From the NCBI RefSeq assembly GCF_021028975.2, contig NC_059439.1, positions 20,336,001 through 20,396,242 on the forward strand: 60,242 nt of DNA, in the 5' to 3' direction. Below, in pieces: positions 19,913-54,371 of the stretch; the stretch's first letter is position 1; each line of letters starts with the position of its first letter. Under the pieces are notes generated by a model. It saw nothing but the letters and a program-made list of their open reading frames with translations. It made no database searches and had not been told where the DNA came from. The stretch is from Sphaerodactylus townsendi. Taxonomy: Eukaryota. The position numbers were made by a program, and so were the translations under genes.

Positions 19913-20869
19913 TTAACATAAGGAATTAGCTACTTCAAAAATTTTAGCAGTTATTCTGTAAACAGCTGCCTTGACCTCTCTATTCCTCAGACTGTATATA
20001 AGAGGGTTGAGCATCGGAGTGAAGACCGTGTAAAATAGGGAGAAGATTCTATGAAACTCTTTCATTGTTTTAGTTTCAGGAAGCAAATAGACACAAATCA
20101 GAGACCCATAAAAAAGTGTGACAACAATGAGATGGGAGGAACAAGTGGAGAAGGCCTTCTGCCTGGAAGCCTTGGTCCTCATTTGGAGGATGTTGATGAT
20201 AATAATCATATATGAGATGAGGGTAAGGAGGAATGGTGGTACAATGTCTATGGAGGAAAAAATGAAAATCACAAGTTCCACTAAGCGAATGTCACTGCAG
20301 GAAAGCTTCAACATAGGCGCTAGATCACAAAAGAAATGTTCAATTTCATTAGGACCACAAAATGATAGCTTGAATAAAAGGGATGTTACTACGCTGACAT
20401 TTGACAGACTAGCCATCCAACAGATGACAAGAAGCCAAAAGCAAATCCTGCCATTCATAAGGTATGTGTACCGCAGTGGTCTGCATATGGCTAGATAGCG
20501 ATCATAGGACATCACGGCCAGGAGGTAACATTCAGCACATCCTAAAGAAGCACAGAAGAAATACTGTACAATGCAGCCATGAACAGAAACAGTCCTATCC
20601 CCTGTCAGAAGACTAAAGAGCAATCTGGGCACCATGGTAGATGTGTAGCAGATCTCCAAGCATGACAGGTTCCCTAGGAAGAAATACATGGGGGTGTGGA
20701 GGTGGGCATCATTGACAACAAGCACAATGATGATGAGATTGCCAGACACAGTAAGGATGTAGATTATGAAGAAAGCTAGGAAGAGGAGAGTCTGAAGCTC
20801 TGGGTGGTCACTAAATCCCAGGAGAATGAAGACTGTGTTGATGGTGAGATTTGTCCCATTCTGTATTTG
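19913..20869 (-). CDS. Olfactory receptor OR4 main coding exon (no in-frame ATG before TM1)
   Basis: Open frame from 20869 (QIQNGTNLTINTVFILLGF...) to the stop at 19913 with full OR motifs; preceded by a pyrimidine tract and CAG, with an in-frame stop a few codons upstream. Confidence 0.88.
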   Translation of the reverse strand, partial: QIQNGTNLTINTVFILLGFSDHPELQTLLFLAFFIIYILTVSGNLIIIVLVVNDAHLHTPMYFFLGNLSCLEICYTSTMVPRLLFSLLTGDRTVSVHGCIVQYFFCASLGCAECYLLAVMSYDRYLAICRPLRYTYLMNGRICFWLLVICWMASLSNVSVVTSLLFKLSFCGPNEIEHFFCDLAPMLKLSCSDIRLVELVIFIFSSIDIVPPFLLTLISYMIIIINILQMRTKASRQKAFSTCSSHLIVVTLFYGSLICVYLLPETKTMKEFHRIFSLFYTVFTPMLNPLIYSLRNREVKAAVYRITAKIFEVANSLC

Positions 20870-21140
20870 CTGTAGGAAATAAAAAAGATTTTATGAAATA
20901 AAACTTGTGTTTGTAAAATATGATGAGGAATGGAACGTACACATCCAGTATGAAAAAACAAACAAACTGATGGGGACTGGATACATTTTTGTACTGTATT
21001 TGAAACTTGCAGTTAGAAGCAAGATGACATAATGGTTATAGAGGCCTGTTCCGTCAGGCCTACAGTTGGGGGCAGCAACAGGTACGTTTCCATCTTCAGT
21101 GGCCTCCCTTTCTTCCCCTTCCCTTGTTTAGTTATATTGA

Positions 21141-21518
21141 TCCAATCCAATCCAATCCAAAAACCTTTATTAGGCATAAACCAGAAGTACCATACATTCC
21201 AAATACAAAAACAGGATCATCGTTACATATCATGTAGAACATGGATTAAAAATGTAGCAACTGCTTTAGAAATTTCTACATTAGGGCTGTTCAATAGTTC
21301 AGACATTTTTTGTCTGTCTGAGAGAAACATAAATTCTAAAGGTAGTAAAGCTCCCAGATCGGTTCTAATATCATTATACCTCGAACAGTAAAGCAGGATA
21401 TGAGGGATTGAGTCTATAGCATTGGGACAGTACCGACAGCAATGCTTACTTTGTGGGATGTTAAGGAAACGACCTTGAAGATAGACAGAGGGGAATGAGT
21501 TGCACCTTGCTCTTGTCA
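21141..21518 (-). mobile_element. LINE 3' fragment with CCHC knuckle and (GGATT)n tail
   Basis: Encodes CRYC..HILLYCSRY; 12-bp TSD TAGTTATATTGA. Confidence 0.8.
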
Positions 21519-21619
21519 TAGTTATATTGAATTTGTTCAGTATATAGAGTTGGGGACTTTAGGACTCATTCCATCCTTGGTTGGGTGAAACACCATTCTT
21601 ATATATTTTATATGTCTCA

Positions 21620-22049
21620 GAGTCCAATCCAGAGTGGGGGGAGGCAAATCCCACATTGGACGTGGTGTGGACTCATGCCGATGGGGGTGCCCAACCGACC
21701 ATCATAAGAGGCATCCCAGCTGGCAGTGAGGGCACCCATGCCTCTGAGGATGGGTGGGTGCCTTGGAGTCCTATGCTGCCACACCCAGAAGTGCAGGTAG
21801 CTGTGGTATCATCTGGCATGGAATTGCGTGCCAATGGGAGAGGGGGCATTCCAGGGGTGGGACCAGGGATGGAGCCCACTGCAGGCAGCTTCCACCAGGT
21901 TTTCAGACCCTAGACATCACAGCAGTTGGCACTGAACTTGCACCATGATTTTCACCATGAGTTCCTTCCCACTATGGGGTTTTCTGCGGGAGGAGGATTT
22001 CAAGCTTTTCCTCTTGCTGTGCTCCCCCATCTCCATCTGGATTGGACTC
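21620..22049. mobile_element. Old TIR element
   Basis: 14-bp perfect inverted ends GAGTCCAATCCAGA; no clear TSD. Confidence 0.5.
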
Positions 22050-23319
22050 CCCGAGTACTATGGTTATGAACATTTTATGTCTGAATTATAATTTGTTTTT
22101 ATATTGTTGAGAGCCACTCTGAGACCGCTATGGATGGGGAGAGCAAAATAAAAATCAATCACTCAACTAAATAAATAGTGGTTCAAATCCCTATTCAGCT
22201 CTGAAGATTTGTGGGATACCTTGGACTAGTTATTTTTTTTCTCAATCTAACCGACCTTGTAAGTTATTGTGAGAGTAGAGGGGATAAGAGGGGAACCACT
22301 AAAGCACCCCAAACTCTGGAAAACGAGGGGTTTAGTCTACATGGATTCCTCTGCCCTTACTCTGCTATTGGGAGTTCAGGAGTTTAGGTCTGCACTGAAA
22401 ATCTGTTTTACGCCCAGACGTCTGATACTTCCTGCTATTTTTCCATCAATAATTGAGCTCAAATGGAAGTACATTTATATCTTTCCATACAATATATTCC
22501 TTACTGTTTAAAATATCCTTTTCTGTTTTATCTTCCTGTGACAGAATCCCCATGCTTTGATCCTTAGTGTGCAACAGCTTTGGTGAAAATGTGTGGTATA
22601 CAAATCACAGTAAAAAGGTGTAAACATAAACGCATACCTAAAGTCCATCTACATAAAAACCAACTATGCATTATGTTCAATCTCACACTTGATAGCCAGT
22701 GGTTTTTCATTAAAAAACGTTTTTGGGAGGAGATTACTTGGAGTGGGGGGCGGGGGGAGATCTTTTCCTGGATGCAATTTCATTACAATCCAAGTTGCTC
22801 CTCCATGGAAACTTAAAGAAAACTGCCCTGTAATACAGAACTCAACACAAGTTTCCCACACTGGGTGGGAATAGCTAGGATAAGGAACTGCAACATTTAA
22901 GGAGACAAAATATATCAATATTAAATGAACATCCAGTGTAAGCCTTTTTGCAAAACTGAAAATAGATTAACACCACTCATTATTGACCCAATGATTAATA
23001 AATATATCTGTAAAGTTCCTGCAGCCCATGTTATTACATTTGTAATAACATTTGTAATAACATGTTCCATACACAGCAAATCTTGTTTCTGCAATGAGCT
23101 CTGTAGGTGTCCTTATAAATTCATCTCTCCCTAAGGCTTTATATCTGCAGTGGAGGAATTACTTTTCCAACAGCACTACTTTACAGGGCTGTCATACAGT
23201 TTACACCCAAAAAAGTTAATGGCCGTGTTGGAGTGATGAGAAAAGATGTGATAATCAAGTAGGCCCACTGTAGGGTGCTGACAGAACAGAACTTGTGTGT
23301 CTAGCCTGTGAGGCAGGGG

Positions 23320-23790
23320 TGCCATTTTGGTTGTCTTCTCTAGACATGAGATGCTGCGCAGGCTGAAAAAGAAAGCTTAGCTAGTAGTTGAAACTGCTTT
23401 ACCTCCAAGTGAAATCCATTTGAAAGATGAGCATCGGATGTATTCCACCCGTTCCTCATTTCTGGGTTTGATGATTTCAAGGAACGCTCCTCTTTTCTCC
23501 TGTGTCCTTTGAATTTTCCAGCTCGTTCACTAAAGCACTTGGTCTTGTTGTGCCTGGGAATGCTGATTATTGAAGTGTTTCATCATTTCCAGACTCCCTA
23601 TTTATCTGCTTTACCTGTACTTCAATGCAGAGCAGTATCTTCACCCTTCTGAAAGGGAAAAGGCGACATTATCTTGGTTAAATTAAAATTCCTGCTCTGT
23701 TGGAGTCAAGCTTATCACAGTAATGAAGAGAGAACAGGCTCCTAACCTCTGGGGAGAATATGGAACCCAGAGAATTATAATGTTAGAGGG
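23320..23790 (-). promoter_or_regulatory. Conserved upstream block of OR4 (putative promoter/first exon)
   Basis: Homologous to 29860-30480, 35420-35900 and 39730-40350; conserved AG|GTAA donor; O/E(EBF)-like and TAAT motifs. Confidence 0.45.
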
Positions 23791-26622: not shown

Positions 26623-27624
26623 TCATTGTAAGGGTAGTTTGAGAGCAACACTGGCAATTTTAGCAGCGGTTCTGTAAACAGCTGCCTTGACCTCTCTGTT
26701 TCTCAGACTGTATATAAGAGGGTTGAGCATCGGAGTGAAGACCGTGTAAAATAAGGAGAAGATTCTATGAAGCTCTTTCATTGTTTCAGTTTCAGGAAGC
26801 AAATAGACACAAGTCAGAGACCCATAAAAAAGAATGACTACAATAAGATGGGAGGAACAAGTGGAGAAGGCCTTCTGCCTGGAAGCCTTGGTCCTCATTT
26901 GGAGGATATTGATGATAATAATCATATATGAGATCAGAGTAAGGAGAAATGGTGGTACAATGTCTATGGAGGCAAAAATGAAATTTACAAGTTCCACTAA
27001 GTGAATGTCACTGCAGGAAAGCTTCAACATAGGGGACAGATCACAAAAGAAATGTTCAATTTCATTAGGACCACAAAATGATAGCTTGAATAAAAGGGAT
27101 GTTATTGTACTGATATTTGACAGGCTAGCTATCCAACAAATGACAAGAAGGCAAAAGCAAATCCTGCCATTCATTAGATATGTGTACCGCAGTGGTCTGC
27201 ATATGGCTAGATAGCGATCATAGGACATCACGGCCAGAAGGAAACATTCGGTACATCCTAAAGTAGCACAGAAGAAATATTGCATGATACAACCATGAAC
27301 AGAAACAGCCCTATCCCCTGTCAGAAGACTAAAGAGCAATCTGGGCACCATGGTGGATGTGTAGCAGATCTCCAAGCAGGACAGGTTCCCTAGGAAGAAA
27401 TACATGGGGGTGTGGAGGTGCAGATCTGCAACAACAAGCACTACGATGATAATATTTCCAGCCACAGTGAGCACGTAGATTGTGAGGAAAGACCAGAAGA
27501 GGAGGACTTGCAGGTTTGGGTGGTCACTGAATCCCAGGAGAATGAAATGTGTGATGATCGTACGATCTGTTCTGTTATTGATATACTGTTGGAAATAAAG
27601 AATTTTATGAAACAAGGCTTGCAT
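26623..27624 (-). CDS. Olfactory receptor OR5 (ATG at 27624 may be intronic; exon may start at 27585)
   Basis: OR motifs intact; acceptor-like tctttatttccaacAG ends at 27586. Confidence 0.9.
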   Translation of the reverse strand: MQALFHKILYFQQYINNRTDRTIITHFILLGFSDHPNLQVLLFWSFLTIYVLTVAGNIIIVVLVVADLHLHTPMYFFLGNLSCLEICYTSTMVPRLLFSLLTGDRAVSVHGCIMQYFFCATLGCTECFLLAVMSYDRYLAICRPLRYTYLMNGRICFCLLVICWIASLSNISTITSLLFKLSFCGPNEIEHFFCDLSPMLKLSCSDIHLVELVNFIFASIDIVPPFLLTLISYMIIIINILQMRTKASRQKAFSTCSSHLIVVILFYGSLTCVYLLPETETMKELHRIFSLFYTVFTPMLNPLIYSLRNREVKAAVYRTAAKIASVALKLPLQ

Positions 27625-28367
27625 TTATAAAAAAAAACATTATATAGAATGGAGTTTATGTAAACTTATCCCATGGAGACTTGATTTATTTTTGCACAAT
27701 ATTTGAAGCCTGGATTTTGGATGAAGATGGCCTAATGGGTTGTATGGTTCAAATCTCTCCTCAGCCATGATGTTGTATGAGCAATTATGCCCAGTAGCTC
27801 TCTCTTGGTCCAACTTACCTTGTAGGCTTATTGTGAGGACTACAATAAGAAATAAAAGATGAGGAAGACTGTTTAAATTGCCCTGAACTTCTTGAAGGAA
27901 GTGCAAGGGTCAAAACAAACTGGAGCCTTGGCTCACATAGATTCCTCCAGCAATATTCAGGAAGACTGGGAGTTCAGGCAGGTGGCAAGCAATTATGACC
28001 ACATTAAGAAGGAGTTTTCCATCCTGACACCAATAGTTCTTTCCACCTTGAAACAAGACTTGAGTTTTAATCAATCACACAGAAAGTCTTCACTTGGCTA
28101 GACAATGGGGATATGATACTACCTTGTCATGTAATCTATCATTTCAGTTAACATCCTTATCCACATTACCTCATTTTGGTGTAATAGACCCAGACTTTTG
28201 ATTCTTGGTGTAGAGAAACCTAGAGCCAAGAAGGGGGAAATGTGTGGACCTATCCCTGTTGGTAGTTTTTCTATAGTCCACAGACTTTCTCCAACCCAGC
28301 TACAGAGCTGAAAGTCATAGGTTTGTCACACTGGCAGAGAGTTGAATGGGTTAATTGAATTGAGAGA

Positions 28368-28635
28368 GGGCCTTTCCCCACTTACCTTAAGCCCCGCGCT
28401 ACTTGAGGAGAGTAGCGCGGGGTCCCCGGGCACTCCCCACGACAGGGGCGGTGACAGTGCAGCTGCCGCGACTCTGCCGCTGTTGCGCCCCCTCAGCATG
28501 CAGCATCCCAGGCGCACTTCTTAATGGTGCCTTTTGATGACCCCATTCTGGGAGTGCCTGGGCGTGCGCCTGGGATGCTGCGCGCTGAAAGCAGCGCGCG
28601 GTATAGGGGGGATCAGGGTGAGTGGGGAAAGGCCC
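28368..28635. mobile_element. GC-rich palindromic MITE (Harbinger-like)
   Basis: TIR GGGCCTTTCCCCACTYACC, TSD AGA, empty site at about 34015-34025. Confidence 0.85.
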
Positions 28636-29320
28636 AGAGTTGAATGGGTTAATGAGAGTCAGTGTTGGGTAGTGGTTAAGAGCGGGTCGATTCTTTCTGA
28701 AAGCTATCAATGGAGTTATAATATACATACTAAAATTTTAAAATTTTTAATTGATCCCATATTTTAGTTAATTGAGAAGCATCATTTGGATTTGTTATGC
28801 ACCATATTTTAATGCAAAACCTACCAAAGTCTGTTCATAGAGTAATGGAACAAAAACAAGGGCAATTCATCATTCTCCTAACCTTGCTAGAATCCTGCAG
28901 GAACATGGATGGTCAATATTGAAAACGAGTCAATTCAGTACTTACAACAAGATATGGATTGGTTAAACAGCTTGGTTAAAAATCTGTCACTACTTCAGCA
29001 AGTAGTAATTCCATGAACTGCAATTTAAGCTCCTCATTTTATTGTCCACTGAAATTTCCATTGGTAGAAGTTTCAACCGATTATGCATGCAGACAGTGGA
29101 AATGAGTTGTGAGGATGTTTTTTTGGGACTCTTTTGGTTTGGTCAGATCAGTTCAGTACAAATACAAATGTGTAACTCATTTATTTTGTGTGACATCTAT
29201 GTAGGCAAGCTGTTTTGCCATAAAACCTGACCCCCATGGGTGGTCAATTGTCTAGTCAATCATCTCAGCAGGTATTGGTTGTGGTATCATGCAAAAAAAA
29301 TGAAAAGAGAGATGTAGTAT

Positions 29321-29503
29321 NNNNNNNNNNNNNNNNNNNNNNNNNNNNNNNNNNNNNNNNNNNNNNNNNNNNNNNNNNNNNNNNNNNNNNNNNNNNNNNN
29401 NNNNNNNNNNNNNNNNNNNNNNNNNNNNNNNNNNNNNNNNNNNNNNNNNNNNNNNNNNNNNNNNNNNNNNNNNNNNNNNNNNNNNNNNNNNNNNNNNNNN
29501 NNN
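29321..29503. other. Assembly gap (N run)
   Basis: Run of N, adjacent to a SINE 3' tail. Confidence 0.99.
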
Positions 29504-29782
29504 CCTCTTTCTCTCCTGTAGGAGACTCAAAAGGGCTTACAATCTCCTTCCCCTTCCCTACTCACAACAAACACCCTGTGAGGTGGTGGGGCTGAGAGAG
29601 CTCCGAAAAACTGTGACCAGCCCAAAGTCACCCAGCTGGCGTGTGCACAGGCTAATCTGAATTCCCCAGATAAGCCTCCTCACCTTAAGCGGCAGAGCTG
29701 GGAATCAAACCCGGTTCCTCTTAGCCTGCTCTTAGCGACTGCTCTTAGACACCACACCACTGCTGCTTAGACACTACGCCAC
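29504..29782 (-). mobile_element. Squam3-like SINE variant, tail lost in the assembly gap
   Basis: Family signature; matches the 52862 copy. Confidence 0.8.
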
Positions 29783-29859
29783 ATATTAATTTGTTTTGAT
29801 TTCCAAAATAAGTAGGGTAACTGTTCGGTGCCAACAGAATAAAACTTGTTGTTTTATTA

Positions 29860-30480
29860 CAGCACAACTAAAAGGTACCATTCTGTCACAGATGTCCATG
29901 AGCAAACACAAGATTCTCTATGGAGTGATGGAGAAAATTGAACACATACTGAAAAAAAATAGTTTTACCTCAAAATGAATTTCATTAGGAAAAGAAATAT
30001 TAGTCATATTCAATCTGCTCCCCATTCCTGGGTATCTCAGGGCACACCCTACTTGTCTTCCTGGCTCCTTCGCCAACTGGAATTCATTTCCTAAACAGCT
30101 TCCTCATGTTGGTTCTAGGAATTATTGACTGAATATTTAAATAGTTTTGTTTCCTTTGACTCCCTATTCATTTTCTCAACTGTCATACAAAGCACTCTCA
30201 TTACCCATTTGGAGGGAGAAAGCATCGTGGTGGTTGAGTTCAATTATTGCTGGAGTCAAGCTTCTCACAGAAGTGAAGACAGAATAAACACTTGTCCTCA
30301 GAGGAGTATAGGAAACCCAGAGGACTGTTACTTCTGAGGAAAATTTTCTTCATTAAAGATGTGAGAATTTAAATGAACACTTATCTGTGTCCAAAAGTGA
30401 ATGAAATTAAAGACTAGTTCTGCCCTTTTAACATAATCTAATCCTGTGAGAAAATGTCAACTTCAGAGAATGAACTGAAG
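29860..30480 (-). promoter_or_regulatory. Conserved upstream block of OR5 (putative promoter/first exon)
   Basis: Non-repeat sequence conserved among four paralogs; donor GT at 29968-29967. Confidence 0.5.
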
Positions 30481-32288: not shown

Positions 32289-33284
32289 TTAAGGTAGTTT
32301 GAGAGCAACACTGGCAATTTTAGCAGCGGTTCTGTAAACAGCTGCCTTGACCTCTCTGTTTCTCAGACTGTATATAAGAGGGTTGAGCATTGGAGTGAAG
32401 ACCGTGTAAAATAAGGAGAAGATTCTATGAAGCTCTTTCATTGTTTCAGTTTCAGGAAGCAAATAGACACAAATCAGAGACCCATAAAAAAGAATGACTA
32501 CAATAAGATGGGAGGAACAAGTGGAGAAGGCCTTCTGCCTGGAAGCCTTGGTCTTCATTTGAAGGATGTTGATGATAATAATCATATATGAGATCAGAGT
32601 AAGGAGAAATGGTGGTACAATGTCTATGGAGGCAAAAATGAAATGCACAAGTTCCACTAAGTGAATGTCACTGCAGGAAAGCTTCAACATAGGCGACAGA
32701 TCACAAAAGAAATGTTCAATTTCATTAGGACCACAAAATGTTAGCTTGAATAAAAGGGATGTTATTGTACTGACATTTGACAGGCTAGCCATCCAAGAGA
32801 TGACAAGAAGCCAGAAGCAAATCCTGCCATTCATAAGATATGTGTACCGCAGTGGTCTGCATATGGCTAGATAGCGATCATAGGACATCACAGCCAGGAG
32901 ATAACATTCAGTACATGCTAAAGAACCGCAGAAGAAATATTGCATAATACAACCATGAACAGAAATAGTTCTATCCCCTTTCAGGAGACCAAAGAGCAAT
33001 CTGGGCACCATGGTGGATGTGTAGCAGATCTCTAAGCAGGACAGGTTCCCTAGGAAGAAATACATGGGGGTGTGGAGGTGCAGATCTGCAACAACAAGCA
33101 CTACGATGATAATATTTCCAGCCACAGTGAGCACGTAGATTGTGAGGAAAGACCAGAAGAGGAGGACTTGCAGGTTTGGGTGGTCACTGAATCCCAGGAG
33201 AATGAAATGTGTGATGATCGTACGATCTGTTCTGTTATTGATTTGCTGTTGGAAATAAAGAATTTTATGAAACAAGGCTTGCAT
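32289..33284 (-). CDS. Olfactory receptor OR6, tandem paralog of OR5 (exon may start at 33245)
   Basis: OR motifs intact, highly similar to OR5; acceptor-like AG at 33247-33246. Confidence 0.9.
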   Translation of the reverse strand: MQALFHKILYFQQQINNRTDRTIITHFILLGFSDHPNLQVLLFWSFLTIYVLTVAGNIIIVVLVVADLHLHTPMYFFLGNLSCLEICYTSTMVPRLLFGLLKGDRTISVHGCIMQYFFCGSLACTECYLLAVMSYDRYLAICRPLRYTYLMNGRICFWLLVISWMASLSNVSTITSLLFKLTFCGPNEIEHFFCDLSPMLKLSCSDIHLVELVHFIFASIDIVPPFLLTLISYMIIIINILQMKTKASRQKAFSTCSSHLIVVILFYGSLICVYLLPETETMKELHRIFSLFYTVFTPMLNPLIYSLRNREVKAAVYRTAAKIASVALKLP

Positions 33285-34036: not shown

Positions 34037-34340
34037 GAGAGCCAGCGTGGTGTAGTGGTTAAGAGCAGGTGAATTCTAATCTGGAGAACCAAGTTTGATT
34101 CCCACTCCTTCAACTGAGTGGCAGAGGCTTATCTGGTGAATTAGATGTGTTTTCCCACTCCTACATTCCAGCTGGGTGACCTTGTGCTAGTGACAGTTCT
34201 TCCAAACTCTCTCAGCCCCACCTACCTCACAAGGTGTCTGTTTTGGGGAGACAAAGGAAAAGGAGCTAGTAAGCCACCTTGAGTCTCTTTACAGGTGAAA
34301 AATGTGGAATATAAATCAAATCTCTTCTCCTTCTTCTTCT
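34037..34340 (+). mobile_element. Squam3-like SINE, full length with (CTT)n tail
   Basis: Head GAGAGCCAGCGTGGTGTAGTGGTTAAGAGC and tail cttctccttcttct; the paralog at 28654-28694 keeps only the head. Confidence 0.85.

Positions 34341-38655: not shown

Positions 38656-38713
<58 letters not shown>
38656..38713. repeat. (GGCA)n microsatellite
   Basis: Direct inspection. Confidence 0.95.
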
Positions 38714-38715
<2 letters not shown>

Positions 38716-39719: not shown

Positions 39720-39729
39720 AAAACCATGT

Positions 39730-45044: not shown

Positions 45045-46202
45045 TTAGTTATGGTGGCCTGATGTCCAAAGGATACAAGATTTGTGGTGGGGTACTATTT
45101 GTTAGGCTTAAAAAAACCCCTATTATAGTGCTACTTAATGCCAAATAGAATTGTTATCTATTAAGGAAAAACTACTGAAGTTAGTATCAACAGTGAAGTT
45201 TCTGAGGTCTGGAATTTATTCCCTTCTTTTTTTCCCTTCCTCCTTGTACTTTCAACAGATATAATTGTCAAATATAATGGTTATCTATTAGGGGGGAAAA
45301 GTTACTACTGAAGTTAGTATTAACAGTGAAGTCTCTGAGGTCTGAAATTTCTTCTTTTCTTTTTGTTCTTTCCTGTACTTTCAACAGAGAAAGGTTAATT
45401 AACACTGGCAAAGTTCTAACAAACGACAAACTCCTCCCCCCACTGCCAGTACTCAGACTTTATTCCATTTCGTTTCTTCATGTAGACTCTAACTACATAG
45501 GAAAACAAACTACTGTCATTTTGCTCTTGAATAAATGAATGTTAAGGAGAGCAGCAGATCTAAAGCATGGATGGGTGCATAAGGACAACAAACTGGAGGA
45601 ACTTGTATCTAAGGAATGGGACATCAATGGAATACATCAGAGATTCCACCCACAGTCATTTTAGAGGTAAATACCAAGCTCCATTCACTAAGCCCAAGAT
45701 AGGATGATTTAATTTTTATTTCATGCCTGTTTGAAAGTGAAACTTTTTCAAAAAAAAATAATCTGGACATTGTATTCTTTTTAACAGTAATAATCCTCTA
45801 TAAAAGAGATATATCTGGAAGCCCTAAGTTTGTTGGAACTAGCTGGCTTAGACTGGAGTAACAATGTTGTAGGACTGTATCAAGCACTGTACCACATTTT
45901 TGGCATGCAAGCTCTGGGTTGGCCAATTGTAGCTACATGTTCCCTACATCTGGCATTAATCTGGATTCTCGTGGGTGGGTCAGATTAACAGCTGGAACTG
46001 GAGATTACTCACTGAAGTTGATAGAAGATAGATATGCTATTTTCTGTAGGATGGTCTTAATTCAAGAACTGCAGCATACTTCAAATATTCCTTTTATGTT
46101 AACTCTGACTGTAGGATGGTCCCATGGTTTACCAGGAAAGGATTAGACAATTCAATCTTTTTTTGAGCTAACCATACTGGAAGCATGCTTTTGAATGGTA
46201 TA

Positions 46203-46350
46203 GGCTCATTCTGCACATGCAGAATAATGCACCTTTCTAAACTAGTTTTCAGTGCTCTCTTTAAAGCAAGGAATAGCAAAATCCAATTTGCAAACAGCTG
46301 TGAAAGTGGCTCAAAATGCATTATTTTGCAAGTGCAAAGTGAAGGGGGCT
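46203..46350. mobile_element. Harbinger-like MITE (diverged)
   Basis: Same family. Confidence 0.7.
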
Positions 46351-46649
46351 GGTGGTGGAATAATTTTTCTGAAAGTAGCTGTTCTAGGCAAAAAAAAAAG
46401 AGAGGTCATTTTTAAAGCATGGATTTGTCCTTAGTTATGATACTATGGAGCTGAGAAATATCTCTGAAATGTGTGTGGCCTATTGAAGAAAAGGTCAGGA
46501 CCTACTTTTATTCCCATATATTCTGATTTGTAGTTCACAACCTTGAAAATTTTCTTGATTACGTTTGCATTTCCCTTAGTGACTTCCCCACCAGCAAATC
46601 TGATCCTGAGTATCACAACTTGTTTTTCTGTTCCTAACCTCAAAGTGCA

Positions 46650-46900
46650 GTTTTGGTGGTTATATAGAGGGGTTCTAACTTAGTGAACTGGATTCGTTTG
46701 TCCGCTTTTTTCCCTATTACGTAGTTCGTTGGTGACCTGTTGAGCCAGTCATACCCGTCCGAACTCTCTCATCCAACCCAGAGGCACACAACAACAAACC
46801 ACCCTGAATGACTCTTGCCTTCAAAATCCTATAGAGTCACCATAAGTCAGTAGTGATTTGATGGCGAATGCATGCATGCACGCATGCACACACACACACA
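46650..46900 (+). mobile_element. Degenerate SINE with Sauria-type tail ending in (CA)n
   Basis: ggtgacc..gccagtca core, then aaaccaccctgaatgactcttgcc...gtcaccataagtcag...cacaca. Confidence 0.55.
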
Positions 46901-46999
46901 GAGCGAGAGAGAGAGAGAGAGAAAGAGAAAGCCTCATATGTATGTCAGCCTAGAGAGGATGCATTCCATCCATGTGATAAAAAATACTGTAGTTCAATG

Positions 47000-47150
47000 T
47001 ATTGTTGAAGGCTTTCACGGCCGGAATCACTGGGGTGCTGTGTGGTTTCCGGGCTGTATGGCCGTGTTCTAGCAGCATTCTCTCATCAGATCCTCTGAAG
47101 ATGCCAGCCACAGATGCAGGCGAAATGTCAGGAGAGAATGCTGCTAGAAC
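47000..47150. mobile_element. Penelope-like fragment with partial inversion; + strand hammerhead at 47092-47132
   Basis: Same sequence family as 4353-4591. Confidence 0.75.
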
Positions 47151-48142
47151 CACGCGCCGCAAGCAGCTCCGAAACCAATAATAGCACTCCCAGTGGCCAG
47201 GGGCTTTGCAAAACGAGCATGCTACAATAAAAATGTGGAAGGTTCCACAAGGCCCCTGTTGATTTTTCGGCATTAGATGCAAACAGCTACCCCTCTCAAA
47301 CAATTTCCACTGCTTTCTGACGCTAAATGGACCTCATGAAAGACCCCAGTTAATATATTGGGTGGCTAGAAACTTGTTTACAGCATTCCAAGATCTGTGT
47401 CTAGAGTCACTGCTATAAATCTATGGACTATTCTAGAGTGGCAAAGCGAAAGCCACCGAAATGGTCCCCATGCTCGCAGAATGTTTTGGATTAATTACTG
47501 AAGAGGGGCTTTCACTTTTTTTTAGAACTGACAGTTTATGCCATATTAGTTTGCAGTTTTCACTGAGTGCAACAGTGCCAAAGAGTAAGGAATGAAAGTA
47601 GATTCTCCCCTCATCCTCATGTGCATTTTTGGCCTTCCTCATTATAAAACGTGCAGCGTGGAAAGGCAAAGTAGCCAGAAAGCAGAGACATGCCGAACAT
47701 GATTCCAGATTAATCCTTCTGCTTCTATCTCTCAAACTCAAAATCATGTACAGCAGTTCCTTACACTCATGTTTATTTTTATCTTCATAAAATCTTCTAG
47801 AGATGCAGTCATTGGGTTTTCTTTTCCCCTGTACAGAAGGTGGTCTATGAAATACCTTGAGATTTGGAGGCAGTGCCTATGAATATGTGGTAATTTGGGA
47901 TGTGATCTATGGCATACCATAGAAGGTGTCCTCCGAAGCTACCATTTTTGCTATTTTTCCTGGGGAACTGTACTCTGGATGTCCATTGTAATTCCACCAG
48001 AATATCACAGGCCAAACTAAAGTATAAAATCCTACATAACCCCCCACTCTTTCACTCGGCTCTCTTTTGAATTGCTTTTCCCCTTTCCCAATTCTATGCA
48101 ATAAATTATTCTATGCTCAGAACAAACTCTGGAAGTTAGTAT

Positions 48143-48180
<38 letters not shown>

Positions 48181-48212
48181 GAGAGAGAGGAGAGAGAGAG
48201 AGAGAGAGAGAG
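48143..48212. repeat. (GA)n microsatellite
   Basis: Direct inspection. Confidence 0.95.
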
Positions 48213-48224
48213 CACATGTTTGGA

Positions 48225-48535
48225 TAGGCTGACCAGACGCCCTGCTTTTGGCGTGACAGTCCCGGCTTTAAACAATTTATCCCACATCCCTGGTTCTTCC
48301 ACTTGTCCCGATTTTAGGGAGGCCAGTCGCACTCGCCTCTCTGGGGCTGCAAGGCAAAAGCGGCAGCCTCCCACACGCGCGGCCGCAGGAGCGCACGGCC
48401 TTCTGGGGCTTGCCGTTTGCCGCCCATCACAGGGCGGCAAACGGCAAGCCCCAGAAGGCCGTGCGCTCCTGCAGCTGCGTGTGCGGCCGCCTCCCCCCCA
48501 TCCCAGATCACAAAGGTGACCATCTGGTCACCTTA
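48225..48535. mobile_element. hAT (Blackjack/Tip100-type end) MITE with a perfect internal hairpin
   Basis: TIR TA(G/A)G(C/G)TGACCAGA, TSD YGTTTGGA. Confidence 0.8.
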
Positions 48536-48608
48536 CGTTTGGACCAAAATTATCTTGTGAGCTTCATAGATGAACTGGGATTTGAACTTGGTCATTCAGA
48601 TTCTAGTC

Positions 48609-48808
48609 CAGGGGTCTGCAACCTGAGGCTCTCCAGATGTTCACGGACTACAATTCCCATCATCCCCTGCCACCATGGCCAATTGGCCACTGAAATTTTC
48701 TCCTCCCTCTAATCCCTCCACCCCCACACTCCAATTGACCATGGTGGCAGGGGATGATGGGAATTGTAGTCCATGAACATCTGGAGAGCTTCAGGTTGCA
48801 GACCCCTG
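48609..48808. mobile_element. hAT (Charlie-like) palindromic MITE with a central insert
   Basis: Related to the 15718 element; TSD TTCT(A/G)GTC. Confidence 0.85.
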
Positions 48809-49441
48809 TTCTGGTCTCTCTCTCTAGCATTACTAGCCTTCCCCTCACCCTCCCTATGCATGGGAGGTCTCTCTGTCCATTAGCTTTACCTGCTGTGGGG
48901 GTTATGTCATCTATACAGTTTCATAGCAACAAACATATCCTTAATGGTGCGTAAATATGTACTAATTGCCATAGTAACAATGGGGGGGGGGCATAGGAAA
49001 TTTTCTGTCCACTCATGTTCTATGCTGCTGAGAGTCACCACCAGCCCCCAAAACAACAAATGAAAACAAATTGCATGGGTTTGCTTGACTTTCATGGGGC
49101 TTCAAGATGAACAGGGCCACTGGAATTTTCTCCTCCCTCTAATCCCTCCACCCCCCCACCCCCCCACTCTCCGTGGTCCTGCTGTTCCTAAACCAACTTC
49201 TACTTTTTTTAAAAAAACCACTAATTTTAAGAAATTATTCATATGTGTAACTTGTGAAGAAGATGACCTCAAAATATTTGATTTAAAAAAAAATCAAAAC
49301 TGTTCTTTTCATAGAATTTTTTGAATGTCCACATTGCATTTTTATAGGAATTTTTATGCACTATAAAGACAAAAACAAAACACCACACACACACATAAAA
49401 ATCAGCAGCATAACACACGCACGCACGCACGCGCGTGCTCA

Positions 49442-49444
<3 letters not shown>

Positions 49445-49490
<46 letters not shown>
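49445..49490. repeat. (AC)n microsatellite
   Basis: Direct inspection. Confidence 0.95.
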
Positions 49491-49491
<1 letters not shown>

Positions 49492-49611
49492 GGTCTAGCC
49501 TTATCTATTTATTTAGTGCATTGTTATCCTACTGTTCTTCCATGGAACTGACAGAGACACACATTGTTCTTTTTTTCTTATATTTTATGCTCAGAACAAC
49601 CCTGGAAGTTA

Positions 49612-49663
<52 letters not shown>

Positions 49664-49999
49664 GGGGGGGAGAGGGGGGGCTTATGGGTTAACTCAAAAA
49701 GAGTTTTCCCTAACAAAATTAGAAGTGTTTGTCATCCAGGGGAGCTGATTTCTGTCATCTGGAGATGAGTTGTAATTCCAGAAGATTTCCAGGACCCACC
49801 TGGAGGTTAGCAATCCCAGCTCCTAGCCACACCATAAAATATCAAAATTATAATCTCGGCCTTCCTGTCATCCAAAATTGTGCTCCACCTTAATTCAAGA
49901 ACTGCAGCATACTTCAAATATTCCTTTTATGTTAACTCTGACTGTTTAATTGCTTCCTTATTTCGTAACAAACGTGGGTTCAGCTGCCAGTCTTTAAAA

Positions 50000-51099
50000 C
50001 AGTGACGTAGGTATAGATATTTTTATGGAGGGGGTTTGAAGGTGGGGCCATGACCCCATGCATCACCAAGCCCCACCCCTGGCTGCAGTGCTTATAAAAG
50101 TAGCTATCCAAGGCTAGAGACGGCAGACTCCCCTGCCCTGCCCACCCCCCCCCCAGCAGCTGGGCTCCCAGCTGGCAGCCAGCAGTCCCTTCTGCCCTCC
50201 CCTCTGGGAAGAGGTGTAGCTAGGGAAAATGGAGCCCGGTGCAAAATCTGAGTTTTGGGGGGGGGGCCTCCAATGGGCGGTCACTGTGATGCTGGAATCC
50301 ACCCCCAAACAGCATCACCTTCAATGGTGTTTAAACTAGGGAGCCCAGATTCTCCTTTTAAATCCATCTTAAAGGGAGAATCTGGGGTCCGCAGTTAAAA
50401 CAACATTGAAAGTGATGCTTTTTTGGGGTGGATTCTCCCTCACCCTGAAACAGCGTCACTTTCAATGTTTAAACTGGGGACCTCAGATTCTCCCTTTCAA
50501 TCCATGCTGAAGGGGGTGGATTTAAAAAGAGAATCTGGAGAAATGTTGGGGGTTGCCTGCTGTCAGGGGTGCAATTCTAATCCAATCCAATCCAATCCAA
50601 AAACCTTTATTAGGCATAAAACTAGAAGTACCATACATTCCAAGTACAATAACAGGATCATTGTTACACATTATGTAGAAAATGGATTAAAAAAAGTGGC
50701 GGGTGCAATTGTTAAGCTAGCAAAACCAAACTTTCAGGGTATCTTTAGGAGACTCTCCTGATGATATCACCCCAGTTTGGTGAAGTTTGGTTTGGACCCC
50801 CAAATGTGTAGCTCCCATCTCCTATTAGCTCCCATTGGAAACAATGGGGGATGGGGCACCCCCTTGGAAAGTTCATAACTTTGGACCCCCTGACCCAAAC
50901 CTCACCAAACCTGGGTGGTATCATCAGGAGAGTCTCCCAACAAATCCCTAAAATGTTGGTGCTGCTAACCTCAAACCTCACCCCCTGCAGGCCATAAACC
51001 AAAAAACATGTAAAAACACAAAAAACCACAAACGGGGGTGGAGCTTTGGACATGTAATGGGGGGGTTGAACCCGAGAACCCCCCTTACCTATGTCCTTG
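50000..51099. mobile_element. Non-autonomous hAT element with internal repeat arrays
   Basis: TIR CAGTGACGTAGGTA / CAAGGACATAGGTA, TSD CTTTA(A/C)AA. Confidence 0.75.
50577..50700 (-). mobile_element. Short 3' end of the same (GGATT)n-tailed LINE, nested in a hAT element
   Basis: Matches 21141-21260; TSD GGGTGCAATT. Confidence 0.8.
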
Positions 51100-51192
51100 C
51101 TTTACAACCTTCTTTTCCTTGCAGTCTCTATTGAATAACAATAGGAACACAATCCACAAGCTTCATTGAATCACTCTCTATTTTCTGTCTTT

Positions 51193-51491
51193 GAGAGCCA
51201 GCATGGTATAGTGGTTAAGAACAGGTGGATTTTAATATGGAGAACTGAGTTTGATTCCCTACTCCTCCACTTGAGTGGTGGAGGCTTATCTGGTGGATCA
51301 GATGTGTTTCCGTGCTCCTACAGTCCTGCTGGGTGACCTTGGGCTAGTCACAGTTCATTCAAAACTCTCTCAGTCCCACCTACTTTACAAGATGTATGTT
51401 GTGGGGAGAAGGGAAAGGAGCTTGTAAGCCACCTTGAGTCTCCTTACAGGAGAGAAAGGTGGGATATAAAACCAAACTCTTATTATTATTA
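51193..51491 (+). mobile_element. Squam3-like SINE, full length with (ATT)n tail
   Basis: Family signature. Confidence 0.85.
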
Positions 51492-52382
51492 TACTTTGAA
51501 GTACCTCCATTGGTAATGCTGGAAAAAAATCCATTCTTGAGGGGGAGCAAAAAATGGCTTGCTAGGAAGAACTGTCAAGTCACAGTCAACTTATGGCACC
51601 CCCACTGGGTTTTCAAGGCAAGTGACCATCAGAGGAAATTTGCCATTGCCTGTCTGTGTAGCAACCGTGAACTCAGCAGGAATGTGATACCATAGAGTCC
51701 ACCTTCCGAAGCTGCTATTTGCTCCAAGACAGCTAATTCTTGAAGTCTGGAGATCACCTGTAATTTCAGGAGTGTACCTTGTAGTTGTCAACCCGAACTC
51801 ATACTATTAAATACAATGCAGAGTTGCTGCATTTACACATATTTATAATTTTATTTTCTGCTTCTGGGATAGTGTACTAGTCTGAATTATGTTAGATGGA
51901 TAGTGGGGGAGCGCATATCATCAGTAAGGCTCTTCCTTGTATGTAGATTATAATTTCATGTCTGGATGGAAAAGCTGGCGACAAGATTCTGAGCAAATAA
52001 TGGGATGTGGTAAGAGAGGTAAGAAGGAAAGTATGGAACTTCACTACCCCTACACAGGCAGGGAACCAAATCACATTTTACAGTCTTTCGGGATCTGTGA
52101 GGATCATTGGATCTGTGGTGCGGTGAGTTCGGGAGGGGGGAAAACCTGTGTGTAACAGAAAATCTGCACTGAAGGGAATGTACATTTGCTATGGGGCAGG
52201 CCACTAATACATAACAGACTATAATCCTCTGCCTTCTCACCCCTTTCTCATGCCTTTTTTCAGCAGAGGTGTACCAGCCAGGATTGAAGCCCCCAAACTG
52301 TGGCAAAATATGCCATTTGGCTCCGAGTCCGCCATCCAAATCCTTGGCTAGAGCTCTCTTAGACATTTTTCCTATATCTATT

Positions 52383-52523
52383 GGCTCATTCCGCACATAC
52401 AGAATAATGCACTTTCAAACTGTTTTCAGTGCTCTTTAAAGCTGTGTGGAATAACAAAATCCACTTGCAAACAGTTGTGAAAGTGGTTTGAAAACGCATT
52501 ATTTTGCGTGTGCGGAAGGGGCC
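52383..52523. mobile_element. Harbinger-like MITE
   Basis: Same family. Confidence 0.8.
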
Positions 52524-52861
52524 TATAGTTTCTATATTCAGAATCGTTTCTATGTTCAAAATATCTGGCTTTCCATTAAAAACGTCCCATAGCAAGCCAT
52601 AGATTTCTGTGCATGGTGCCCATGTAAAAATATGCTCCTGACACATCCACTTCCTGTGTCTCTCTGTTTGACATGTGCAATTTTTTCCTTTATGAACATT
52701 TGTCTCAACTGTGAGGAAGGATGCAAATTTATGATTTCTCTATTTGCATTCTCCAGGACTCCTGGAGACTCCTGTTTCTTTCCTGACTACTGAAGCCTGT
52801 ACACAGCCTGTGTCAGCAGCCTGTATTAATGGGAGAACAGGAGGAGAAAATGGGAGAACAG

Positions 52862-53370
52862 GAGCAGCAGTGGTGTACTGGCTAAGAGCAGTGGCTAAGA
52901 GCAGGTGCACTCTGATCTGGAGGAACCGGGTTTGATTCCCAGCTCTGCCGCTTGAGTTGTGGAGGCTTATCTGGGGAATTCAGATTAACCTGTACACTCT
53001 CACACATGCCAGCTGGGTGACCTTGGGCTAGTCACAGCTCTATGGCGCTCTCTCAGCCCCACCCAGCTCACAGGGTGTTTGTTGTGAGGGGGGAAGGGCA
53101 AGGAGATTGTAAGCCCCTTTGAGTCTCCTGCAGGAGAGAAAAGGGNNNNNNNNNNNNNNNNNNNNNNNNNNNNNNNNNNNNNNNNNNNNNNNNNNNNNNN
53201 NNNNNNNNNNNNNNNNNNNNNNNNNNNNNNNNNNNNNNNNNNNNNNNNNNNNNNNNNNNNNNNNNNNNNNNNNNNNNNNNNNNNNNNNNGGTGTGGGGGG
53301 GGGGGGGGGTGGGGGGTCTTCTTCTTCTTCTTCTTCTTCTTCTTCTTCTTTTTCTTCTTCTTTTTCTTCT
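52862..53370 (+). mobile_element. Squam3-like SINE variant spanning an assembly gap, with (CTT)n tail
   Basis: Head and body at 52862-53145, (CTT)n at 53318-53370. Confidence 0.75.
53146..53289. other. Assembly gap (N run)
   Basis: Run of N, adjacent to a SINE 3' tail. Confidence 0.99.
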
Positions 53371-53423
53371 TCCTTTAATTGACTAATGGTATTCAAACTC
53401 TATTTCAGAATGATATTTGCCAG

Positions 53424-54371
53424 CAAACAGAAACTGGGGGAAATGAGTCGAGCCCTATTTCATTCATCCTTCTAGGATTTGGGAATCACCTTGAACTACG
53501 AATTATCCTCTTTATGCTATTCTTAACCATCTATGTTTTGGCTCTTATGGGAAACCTTCTAATTGTTCTACTAGTTGCAGCTGACGAACACCTTCATACT
53601 CCCATGTATTTCTTCCTCATGAATTTGTCCTGCTTAGAGACGTGCTACAGTTCAACCATTCTGCCCAGGATGCTGACCAGTTTCCTAACTGGCGACAGAT
53701 CCATATCTGTTGGGGGCTGCATCACACAATGTTATTTCTTTGGTATCTTTGCAGCCACTGAATGTTACCTTCTGGCCATGATGTCTTACGATCGTTATTT
53801 GGCAATCTGCAAACCTCTCCATTATACATCTCTTATGACTCGGAGGCTCTGCATGCAACTAGCGTCTACATCTTGGTTGAGTGGCTTCCTTACCAACACT
53901 ATTATAACCTCCTTTATGTTACAGTTAACATTTTGCGGACCCAACAAGATTGACCACTTCTTTTGTGACATCTACCCTGTCTCAAACCTCTCCTGCAGCA
54001 ATCCTTATTTTGTGAAACTTGCAACTTTCATTCTTGGCCTGATAGGAACGGCTCTTCCTTTTGGGTCAACCCTGACTTCCTATATCTGCATTATTCTCAC
54101 CATCTTGAACATTCAGTCCAAAAGTGCCCAGAAGAAGGCTTTCTCCACTTGCTCTTCCCATCTCGTTGTTGTGACCCTCTTCTACGGGTCGATATTCCTT
54201 GTCTATATTGTGCCTGAAACAGTATCTCTGAAGGAGCTTCACAAAACTTTTTCTCTGTTATACACAGTTCTGACTCCGATGCTCAACCCGCTCATTTATA
54301 GCTTGAGAAACCGAGAGGTGAAGGAAGCTCTTTGCAGATGTATCAGGAAATTTAGCAACAGAGTTTCCTAA
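53424..54371 (+). CDS. Olfactory receptor OR8 main coding exon (no in-frame ATG before TM1)
   Basis: OR motifs intact; ORF track start is TTG; branch-like gactaat at 53381 and phase-0 acceptor candidates at 53407-53408 and 53422-53423. Confidence 0.88.
   Translation, partial: QTETGGNESSPISFILLGFGNHLELRIILFMLFLTIYVLALMGNLLIVLLVAADEHLHTPMYFFLMNLSCLETCYSSTILPRMLTSFLTGDRSISVGGCITQCYFFGIFAATECYLLAMMSYDRYLAICKPLHYTSLMTRRLCMQLASTSWLSGFLTNTIITSFMLQLTFCGPNKIDHFFCDIYPVSNLSCSNPYFVKLATFILGLIGTALPFGSTLTSYICIILTILNIQSKSAQKKAFSTCSSHLVVVTLFYGSIFLVYIVPETVSLKELHKTFSLLYTVLTPMLNPLIYSLRNREVKEALCRCIRKFSNRVS

What the first reader, a model, noticed from the sequence alone, without database searches (positions are those of the whole stretch)
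19913..54371. Five ORs carry a splice-acceptor CAG exactly where the start ATG should be: probable split-CDS OR subfamily
Seen: in OR1 and OR3 the Met lies 14 codons before the F of F(I/L)LLGF. In OR4, OR5, OR6, OR7 and OR8 that same codon is CAG, preceded by T-rich pyrimidine sequence, giving phase-0 acceptors at 20870-20871, 27586-27587, 33246-33247, 38482-38483 and 53422-53423. OR4, OR7 and OR8 have no in-frame ATG before TM1, yet their 7TM frames and N-glycosylation sequons are intact. The ATG of OR5 and OR6 lies in the intron-like tract and is absent from the homologous OR4 sequence. Known: vertebrate OR CDSs are normally intronless, although a minority of split-CDS ORs has been described in mammals. 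Inference: a reptile OR clade receives its initiator from an upstream exon, and standard pipelines would call these genes truncated or pseudogenes.
Basis: partly seen in the sequence, partly recalled or inferred. Interest (0 to 1): 0.8.

Follow-up and report, generated by a model that had tools for sequence, protein, structure and literature searches.

The report
Gecko smell receptors with split start
Five of the eight olfactory receptor genes in this gecko cluster almost certainly take their start codon from a small conserved exon 1.4-7.7 kb upstream, an arrangement shared by a large lizard and snake receptor clade, so gene counts that assume one-exon receptors will misread them.

Summary
The window is from the gecko Sphaerodactylus townsendi and holds eight class II olfactory receptor (OR) genes. 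OR4-OR8 have CAG at codon -14. OR4, OR7 and OR8 have no in-frame ATG before TM1.

Each of the five genes has, upstream on its own strand, a 17-19-codon mini-exon: ATG, open frame, then GAG|GTAAA, a phase-0 donor that matches the phase-0 acceptor. OR1-OR3, which have their own ATG, have none.

The same two-exon structure, with the same junctions, is present in Gekko, Podarcis, Elgaria, Paroedura, Thamnophis and Rhineura DNA. The mini-exon peptide heads 22 of about 200 fetched database proteins, from at least 15 squamate species. All of them fall in one squamate-only clade.

Main exons evolve at dN/dS 0.2-0.3.

Two corrections:
- OR8's acceptor is at 53407-53408, not 53422-53423.
- NCBI already models these genes as multi-exon, but with non-conserved upstream exons.

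Both assembly gaps lie inside introns.

No RNA data could be reached, so splicing is inferred. Split-CDS ORs are known in mammals, so this is a new member of a known kind. Another first-stage note reports a similar OR elsewhere in this genome.

The parts
23403..23459 (-). OR4 first coding mini-exon, 19 codons (MRNGWNTSDAHLSNGFHLE); donor GT at 23402-23401
   Evidence: tblastn; alignment; translation and nhmmer E 3.5e-19; TNGAGGTAAA hit; same-species contig identical over it
20870..23402 (-). OR4 intron (2533 nt), GT..AG; holds a high-copy repeat and the exon used by NCBI model P0001 (21938-22030)
19913..20869 (-). OR4 main coding exon (318 codons plus stop), no in-frame ATG before TM1
   Evidence: 100% match to NCBI P0001 from residue 32
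29969..30025 (-). OR5 first coding mini-exon, 19 codons (MGSRLNMTNISFPNEIHFE)
27586..29968 (-). OR5 intron (about 2.4 kb, includes assembly gap 29321-29503); holds a lineage-specific in-frame ATG at 27624-27622
26623..27585 (-). OR5 main coding exon (320 codons plus stop)
35531..35587 (-). OR6 mini-exon; the first ATG is lost through a small deletion and substitution, and the in-frame ATG at 35569-35567 gives MTNISLPNEIHFE
33246..35530 (-). OR6 intron (2285 nt); holds the exon used by NCBI model P0003 (34658-34681) and an in-frame ATG at 33284-33282
32289..33245 (-). OR6 main coding exon (318 codons plus stop)
39835..39891 (-). OR7 first coding mini-exon, 19 codons (MGSRSNLANIHLSDEIHFE)
   Evidence: tblastn E 1.9e-11 against the Euleptes P0008 N-terminus
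38482..39834 (-). OR7 intron (1353 nt), GT..AG
37525..38481 (-). OR7 main coding exon (318 codons plus stop), no in-frame ATG before TM1
45616..45666 (+). OR8 first coding mini-exon, 17 codons (MGHQWNTSEIPPTVILE); donor GT at 45667-45668
   Evidence: sequence; tblastn E 3e-11 against the Paroedura P0181 N-terminus
45667..53408 (+). OR8 intron (about 7.7 kb, includes assembly gap 53146-53289 and NCBI's alternative exon 52033-52122); the acceptor AG is at 53407-53408
53409..54371 (+). OR8 main coding exon (320 codons plus stop), starts NDICQQ, no in-frame ATG before TM1
97..1053 (+). OR1, contrast case: own ATG, ordinary 5'UTR acceptor (cctttgcag) 15 nt upstream, no mini-exon. OR2 (ATG 6114) and OR3 (ATG 11066) are the same.

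Best explanation
OR4-OR8 are two-coding-exon olfactory receptor genes.

Structure (shown). A mini-exon 1.35-7.7 kb upstream carries the initiator ATG and 17-19 codons, and ends in GAG|GTAAA, a phase-0 donor. It would splice to the phase-0 acceptor at the head of the main exon. For OR8 it is the tttcag at 53408.

Product (inferred). The protein would be an ordinary 7TM OR with an extracellular N-terminus lengthened by 13-19 residues. In four of the five genes the extension adds a further N-x-S/T glycosylation sequon; OR7's has none.

Origin (inferred). The intron is the usual OR 5'UTR intron, which OR1-OR3 still have. In this clade the start codon moved onto the upstream exon and the ATG of the main exon was lost. 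The arrangement is inherited. It is shared by a squamate-only OR clade that includes geckos, lacertids, anguids, skinks, amphisbaenians, iguanians and snakes.

OR5 and OR6 (inferred). They have also gained an in-frame ATG inside the intron, so an unspliced or proximally started transcript could give a single-exon isoform. OR6 has lost the first ATG of its mini-exon.

Shown: the sequence anatomy, its conservation and the selective constraint. Inferred: that the splice is actually used and that translation starts on the mini-exon.
For: 1. Association. TNGAGGTAAA occurs 5 times in the window against 0.72 expected, with no shuffle reaching 5. Each hit ends a mini-exon upstream of, and on the strand of, one of the five CAG-type ORs. 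nhmmer finds exactly these five and none for OR1-OR3.

2. Coding signs. The ATG is aligned in 10 of 11 copies. Frame 0 is stop-free in 11 of 11, against 4 of 11 and 2 of 11 for the other frames. All indels inside the exon are 3 or 6 nt. Donor and acceptor are both phase 0.

3. Conservation of structure. Gekko, Podarcis and Elgaria and Paroedura, Thamnophis and Rhineura all have the mini-exon ending (G/A)AG|gtaaa and a main exon starting right after ...(c/a)ag.

4. Spread. Of about 200 fetched proteins, 22 from at least 15 squamate species start with the mini-exon peptide. All of them, together with OR4-OR8, sit in one squamate-only clade of 101 sequences with support 1.0. A turtle relative is single-exon.

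5. Constraint. Main-exon dN/dS is 0.2-0.3 among the paralogs. The first 45 codons after the acceptor give 0.06-0.36. Listed differences from related species are 14 synonymous to 8 nonsynonymous.

6. Assembly. Same-species contigs are identical over the OR4 acceptor and mini-exon, and organism B shows no change at the acceptor.
Against: No RNA evidence. No RNA run holds the locus, so no junction read was seen.

Protein-level constraint on the mini-exon is weak and noisy. dN/dS is 0.13-0.96, and OR5 against OR7 shows 8 nonsynonymous and 0 synonymous differences. Part of its conservation may therefore act on the nucleotide sequence (promoter, UTR or splicing signals) or come from gene conversion.

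NCBI's models for these same genes use other upstream exons with canonical splice sites. I cannot tell whether reads support those.

OR6 lacks the first ATG. OR5 and OR6 have an alternative intronic ATG.

The sequences in the tree were picked as best hits to OR4 and OR8, so the clade picture is sampled, not exhaustive.
Confidence: 0.8

Rival explanations
1. The split CDS is real, but the initiator exon is the one in NCBI's S. townsendi models: 21938-22030 for OR4, 34658-34681 for OR6, 42019-42159 plus 43584-43652 for OR7, and 52033-52122 for OR8. On this view the conserved mini-exon is skipped or non-coding.
For: These exons map exactly to the window and supply in-frame ATGs. Four of the five have canonical, fairly strong GT donors.
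Against: Their peptides share no similarity with each other or with any other species' N-terminus. NCBI's own models for Euleptes, Gekko, Podarcis, Elgaria and others use the conserved mini-exon. P0001's donor (CAA|gttcag) is weak. One contig of organism C carries a 1-nt deletion at 22024, inside that exon. They look like ab initio fillers chosen to obtain an ATG.
Confidence: 0.08
2. The mini-exon is conserved as a promoter, 5'UTR or regulatory element, and its open frame is incidental. The receptors would then start at a non-AUG codon or from an unrecognised start.
For: Synonymous sites in the mini-exon are unusually conserved between OR5 and OR7: dS is 0 there against 0.79 in the main exon. 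The 100-200 nt on both sides are also conserved among the gecko copies.
Against: The aligned ATG, the stop-free frame in 11 of 11 copies, the frame-preserving indels and the matching phase across roughly 200 My are not needed for a non-coding element. Cross-species pairs show dN below dS: Podarcis-Elgaria 0.13, OR8-Paroedura 0.21. No ATG is available in the main exon of most clade members.
Confidence: 0.07
3. OR4, OR7 and OR8 are start-less pseudogenes, and the CAG is only the ordinary 5'UTR acceptor seen in most OR genes.
For: Most vertebrate ORs have a 5'UTR intron whose acceptor lies just before the ATG, as OR1-OR3 do here. A lost ATG is a common pseudogene lesion.
Against: The frames are intact over 318-320 codons, with all OR hallmark motifs. 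dN/dS is 0.2-0.3, including the stretch right after the acceptor. The ATG-less state is shared by orthologs across squamates.
Confidence: 0.05

Closest known systems
Mammalian 'split OR genes' (Barnes et al. 2020, BMC Genomics 21:196, PMC7055050): 13 human and 41 mouse ORs with the CDS split across two exons
   Same: The initiator Met and a few N-terminal residues lie on an upstream exon. The intron falls in the extracellular N-terminal domain. Intron size is a few kb, like the normal 5'UTR intron. Some loci were formerly taken for pseudogenes because they lack an ATG. Some genes have both a split and a single-exon isoform, as OR5 and OR6 might.
   Different: The mammalian cases are scattered over many chromosomes and rest on RNA-seq junctions. 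Here a whole squamate-only clade shares one homologous first coding exon, and no RNA evidence was available. The mammalian namesakes NCBI gives these genes (OR10A7, OR11A1, OR6B1, OR2AP1, OR5AP2, Olfr1020) are absent from the supplementary file of that paper that lists the split ORs, file 3. An independent origin is therefore likely; this is an inference.
Ordinary class II OR gene structure: non-coding 5' exon(s) plus a single coding exon
   Same: Same family (Pfam 7tm_4). An intron ends just upstream of the N-terminal coding region. OR1-OR3 in this window are of this ordinary kind.
   Different: In OR4-OR8 no ATG follows the acceptor, and the upstream exon carries an in-frame ATG.
NCBI RefSeq (Gnomon) predicted proteins of other squamates, for example P0042 Elgaria, P0033 Podarcis, P0008 Euleptes, P0181 Paroedura and P0154 Thamnophis
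   Same: They already encode the mini-exon peptide joined to the main exon at the same junction.
   Different: They are unpublished automatic models. For S. townsendi itself the models (P0001, P0003, P0015, P0121) use other, non-conserved exons.
[quoted passage not shown] 2014, as cited in PMC10869828)
   Same: A further non-mammalian precedent for multi-exon OR coding regions.
   Different: I did not read that paper. It concerns a different vertebrate class, and any relation in intron position is unknown.

Membership tests
Class II olfactory receptor (Pfam 7tm_4, PF13853) | 7TM rhodopsin-type fold with OR motifs (PMYFF, MAYDRY-type, KAFSTC, PMLNPxIYSLRN) | tested here: met
   The motifs are visible in all eight ORFs. 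Database proteins 100% identical to the main exons carry PF13853 and PF00001.
Split OR gene (criteria of Barnes et al. 2020) | Intact ORF of at least 300 aa with seven TM domains once two exons are taken together | tested here: met
   Read exon by exon: 13-19 codons plus 318-320 codons, both open, and both junction sides in phase 0.
Split OR gene (criteria of Barnes et al. 2020) | Initiator Met and splice junction conserved in orthologs or closest paralogs | tested here: met
   The ATG is aligned in 10 of 11 copies. The donor (G/A)AG|GTAAA and the acceptor position are identical in six other squamate genomes.
Split OR gene (criteria of Barnes et al. 2020) | [quoted passage not shown] | tested here: met
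   No ATG lies between the acceptor and TM1 in OR4-OR8. The ATG of OR5 and OR6 lies upstream of the acceptor and is absent in OR4, OR7 and Gekko.
Split OR gene (criteria of Barnes et al. 2020) | Transcript evidence (RNA-seq junction) for the split ORF | not testable with these tools
   The only run search returned six holders, none on record as RNA. The contigs laid were DNA-like and showed no exon-exon joint.
Split OR gene (criteria of Barnes et al. 2020) | Expression in olfactory sensory neurons at the level of coding ORs | not tested
   No expression data were reachable.
Canonical U2-type intron | GT donor, pyrimidine tract and AG acceptor | tested here: met
   GAG|GTAAA at all five donors. 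Pyrimidine-rich tract followed by CAG at all five acceptors.

The most novel reading that the evidence does not exclude
An old OR subfamily, with an origin no later than the gecko versus other-squamate split, has an obligate two-exon coding region. In this sample it has 101 members in two subclades. Its homologous first coding exon of 15-20 codons lengthens the extracellular N-terminus and often adds a second N-glycosylation site. The literature searched here does not describe it. Single-exon OR mining would therefore misclassify or mis-start a sizeable share of squamate ORs. The peptide may matter for receptor trafficking or glycosylation.
Probability: 0.55. Interest if true: 0.55.

Novelty: new member of a known kind. 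Interest (0 to 1): 0.5.

Why it matters
Published reptile OR repertoires assume an intronless coding region and require a start Met (PMC2758906, PMC4825420). The largest recent survey falls back on exon prediction only where no ORF is found (PMC10869828). A clade-wide split start means that intact squamate ORs can be scored as truncated or pseudogenes, or be given wrong N-termini.

In this genome the public models for OR4, OR6, OR7 and OR8 probably carry wrong first exons.

The conserved mini-exon gives a simple marker (ATG, 15-19 codons, GAG|GTAAA) for re-annotating such genes. It also gives a defined peptide to test for a role in OR surface expression.

This extends the mammalian split-OR finding to reptiles as an inherited, subfamily-wide trait.

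Tried and rejected
1. RNA evidence. These were useful for checking the assembly and close-species differences. In the coding exon, however, many 'differences' equal the OR5/OR6 state, so paralog contigs are mixed in and the 14:8 synonymous to nonsynonymous count is rough. Differences inside the OR4 mini-exon were cut from the listing.

2. N-terminal protein census. Searching residues 1-40 of P0042 returned only the query itself. I replaced it with an HMM scan of the roughly 200 proteins already fetched.

3. Turtle origin. A turtle protein with a long N-terminus (P0079) proved to be single-exon.

4. Promoter motifs. A scan for O/E-like sites upstream of the mini-exon was uninformative, because half of random 260-nt pieces also score. 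I make no promoter claim.

5. Mammalian homology. The mammalian namesakes of these genes are not in the Barnes et al. split-OR list.

The joined (spliced) protein was neither built nor searched, and the gaps were neither filled nor looked up.
Full report
**Source and layout.** A protein search with the OR4 frame returned a 100% identical NCBI protein of Sphaerodactylus townsendi. The window therefore comes from this gecko. It holds eight intact class II OR frames: OR1-OR3 and OR8 on the + strand, OR4-OR7 on the - strand. There is also one OR fragment at 17109-17408.

**The observation.**
CAG sits 14 codons before the F of FILLGF in OR4-OR8, and Met sits at that codon in OR1 and OR3.
- In-frame translation upstream of the acceptors meets a stop after 7-11 codons in OR4, OR7 and OR8. 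No ATG lies between that stop and TM1.
- OR5 and OR6 have an ATG 12 codons upstream of the CAG. The homologous triplet is ACA in OR4 and ATA in Gekko. OR4 differs from OR5 there by a 2-nt indel, as expected of non-coding sequence.

**Assembly gaps.**
- Gap 29321-29503 lies in the OR5 intron. Sequence on both sides aligns in order and orientation with the gap-free OR6 intron.
- Gap 53146-53289 lies 119 nt upstream of the OR8 acceptor, also in an intron.
- Neither gap touches a frame.
- Both gaps abut the same end of copies of one SINE-like repeat. This suggests an unassembled simple-repeat tail.

**What public annotation says.** NCBI's proteins for OR4, OR6, OR7 and OR8 (P0001, P0003, P0015, P0121) are longer than the main exon. 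Their extra N-terminal residues map to upstream exons at 21938-22030, 34658-34681, 42019-42159 with 43584-43652, and 52033-52122. All four models enter the main exon at an AG. For OR8 it is 53408. These N-terminal peptides resemble neither each other nor any other species' N-terminus.

**The conserved mini-exon.**
- Gecko orthologs from Euleptes and Gekko start with a shared peptide (MGSRWNITNIHLPNEIHFE and similar), followed by the same residues that follow the CAG here.
- A tblastn of those short N-termini against the window found matches on the - strand upstream of OR7 (39891-39835, E 1.9e-11), OR5 (30025-29969) and OR6 (35572-35531). A weaker match lies upstream of OR4 (23447-23403).
- The four copies align over about 290 nt. 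Each has an open frame of 19 codons ending in an invariant GAG|GTAAA.
- OR8-type orthologs carry a related peptide (M.xEWNTSEIP...ILE). Its match lies at 45616-45666 on the + strand and again ends GAG|GTAAAT.
- The pattern TNGAGGTAAA occurs five times in the window against 0.72 expected. The five hits are exactly these sites.
- A nucleotide HMM finds these five copies and none near OR1-OR3.

Five mini-exons therefore pair with the five ATG-less or CAG-type genes, and none pairs with the three ATG-bearing genes. Donor and acceptor are both phase 0, so each pair reads through in frame. I checked this exon by exon and did not build or search the joined sequence.

**OR8 correction.** Orthologs and NCBI's own model start exon 2 with N-D-(I/L/F). 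In Paroedura, Thamnophis and Rhineura DNA the acceptor is ...tttcag|AAT or ...tttaag|AAT. In the window this corresponds to ctctatttcag|AATGAT, with the AG at 53407-53408.

**Conservation elsewhere.**
- Genomic loci were fetched for Gekko japonicus, Podarcis raffonei and Elgaria multicarinata, and for Paroedura picta, Thamnophis elegans and Rhineura floridana. All show a mini-exon ending (G/A)AG|gtaaa, an intron of 1.7-2.9 kb, and a main exon starting directly after the AG.
- A turtle relative with a long N-terminus is single-exon.
- An HMM of the peptide finds it at the N-terminus of 22 of about 200 fetched proteins. These come from at least 15 squamate species, including skink, iguanians and five snakes. 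No turtle, crocodilian, bird or mammal protein has it.
- In a FastTree of the 7TM cores, every carrier and OR4-OR8 fall in one clade of 101 sequences, all squamate, with support 1.0. OR1-OR3 group with turtle sequences outside it.
- The sample was drawn as best hits to OR4 and OR8, so the clade's true size and limits remain open.

**Is the mini-exon coding?** In favour:
- The ATG is aligned in 10 of 11 copies.
- Frame 0 has no stop in 11 of 11 copies. The other frames are stop-free in 4 and 2 of 11.
- The three indel events inside it are 3, 3 and 6 nt, while 1-nt indels occur just upstream.
- Cross-species pairs give dN below dS: Podarcis-Elgaria 0.13, OR8-Paroedura 0.21, OR5-Gekko 0.32.

Less clear:
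- Within the window, dN/dS for OR4 against the others is 0.7-0.96.
- OR5 against OR7 has eight nonsynonymous and no synonymous differences, although dS in their main exons is 0.79.
- The peptide is thus loosely constrained, and part of the conservation may act on the DNA or RNA or reflect gene conversion.

The strongest argument is indirect. The main exons evolve at dN/dS 0.2-0.3. The 45 codons directly after the acceptor evolve at 0.06-0.36. They are therefore translated, and most clade members have no ATG there.

**Close relatives' DNA.**
- Contigs of the same species are identical to the window over 20675-21167 (acceptor and start of exon 2) and over 21498-23700 (intron and mini-exon).
- In organism B, all six differences and the one indel of the contig that spans the acceptor lie elsewhere.
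- The indels listed for organism B upstream all lie outside the mini-exon.
- A 1-nt deletion at 22024 in one contig of organism C falls inside NCBI's alternative OR4 exon.
- Listed differences in the coding exon are 14 synonymous to 8 nonsynonymous for organism B. Many of them equal the paralog state, so this count is rough.

**Origin.** OR1-OR3 have a normal acceptor 15-19 nt before their ATG. The intron is therefore the usual OR 5'UTR intron. In the split clade an ATG on the upstream exon came into frame and the downstream ATG was lost. This is an inference.

**Open points.**
1. No RNA run was available, so use of the splice is inferred.
2. In 10 of 11 copies an AG preceded by a pyrimidine-rich run lies 0-2 nt before the mini-exon ATG. 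The mini-exon may therefore be an internal exon with a further non-coding exon upstream. Alternatively, the AG may only reflect a purine at -3.
3. OR6 has lost that AG and the first ATG by a small deletion. It keeps an in-frame ATG at codon 7 and shares with OR5 the intronic ATG. It may therefore be shifting to another start.

**What is known.**
- Split-CDS ORs are established in human (13) and mouse (41), with RNA support, and were often former 'pseudogenes' lacking an ATG (PMC7055050).
- Reptile OR surveys assume intronless coding regions (PMC2758906, PMC4825420).
- The large vertebrate survey treats ORs as single-exon, with an exon-prediction fallback (PMC10869828).
- Four literature searches found no description of a squamate split-OR clade. 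That library is incomplete, so this is absence of a hit, not proof.
- The structure is implicit in automatic RefSeq models of other squamates.

**Verdict.** This is a new member of a known kind. Interest is moderate. A first-stage note elsewhere in this genome reports another candidate split OR (s1-751641). I did not test it.

Noticed in passing
window 21938-22030(-), 34658-34681(-), 42019-42159(-), 43584-43652(-), 52033-52122(+): NCBI's S. townsendi models for OR4, OR6, OR7 and OR8 take their ATG from these exons. The exons are not conserved among the paralogs or in other species. They lie inside the intron I infer, or (for OR7) upstream of it. They are probably ab initio fillers.
   Followed up: partly
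window 32328, 30587-30616, 28169-28210 (-): NCBI model P0003 (OR6) replaces the last 13 residues of the OR6 frame with a tail that maps to two pieces upstream of and inside the OR5 gene. I saw no canonical splice sites at the boundaries I could map. It is either a read-through or chimeric transcript, or a modelling artefact.
   Followed up: partly
window 29321-29503 and 53146-53289: Both assembly gaps abut the same end of copies of one SINE-like repeat (…gggcttacaatctcc…), in opposite orientations. The second gap is followed by a G-run and (TCT)n. This suggests an unassembled simple-repeat tail.
   Followed up: partly
window 39892-39915, 30026-30044, 23460-23484 (-), 45590-45615 (+); same place in L001-L005, L007: An AG preceded by a pyrimidine-rich run lies 0-2 nt upstream of the mini-exon ATG in 10 of 11 copies. 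The mini-exon may therefore be an internal exon of about 60 nt rather than the first exon.
   Followed up: partly
window 35585-35600 (-): Relative to OR5, OR6 has a deletion of about 11-16 nt plus a substitution. Together these remove the first ATG and the AG just upstream of its mini-exon. An in-frame ATG at codon 7 remains.
   Followed up: partly
window 29969-30025 vs 39835-39891 (-): The OR5 and OR7 mini-exons differ at 8 sites, all nonsynonymous, and at no synonymous site. dS between their main exons is 0.79. Possible causes are gene conversion, nucleotide-level constraint or diversifying change; I could not tell which.
   Followed up: no
window 17109-17408 (-): An OR pseudogene fragment matching roughly residues 207-305 of an OR, at 41-49% identity.
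   Followed up: no
window 19700-19833 and 21040-21575: Very high word depth (10^5) in all four runs marks high-copy interspersed repeats just downstream of OR4 and inside its intron. Organism C contigs skip 390 nt at 21128-21519, so that repeat insertion may be absent or different there.
   Followed up: no
window 6096-6160 (+): OR2's N-terminus is out of register with its near-identical paralog OR3. Its ATG lies 17 codons before FILLGF and a 1-nt difference restores the frame, so its start region has been remodelled.
   Followed up: no
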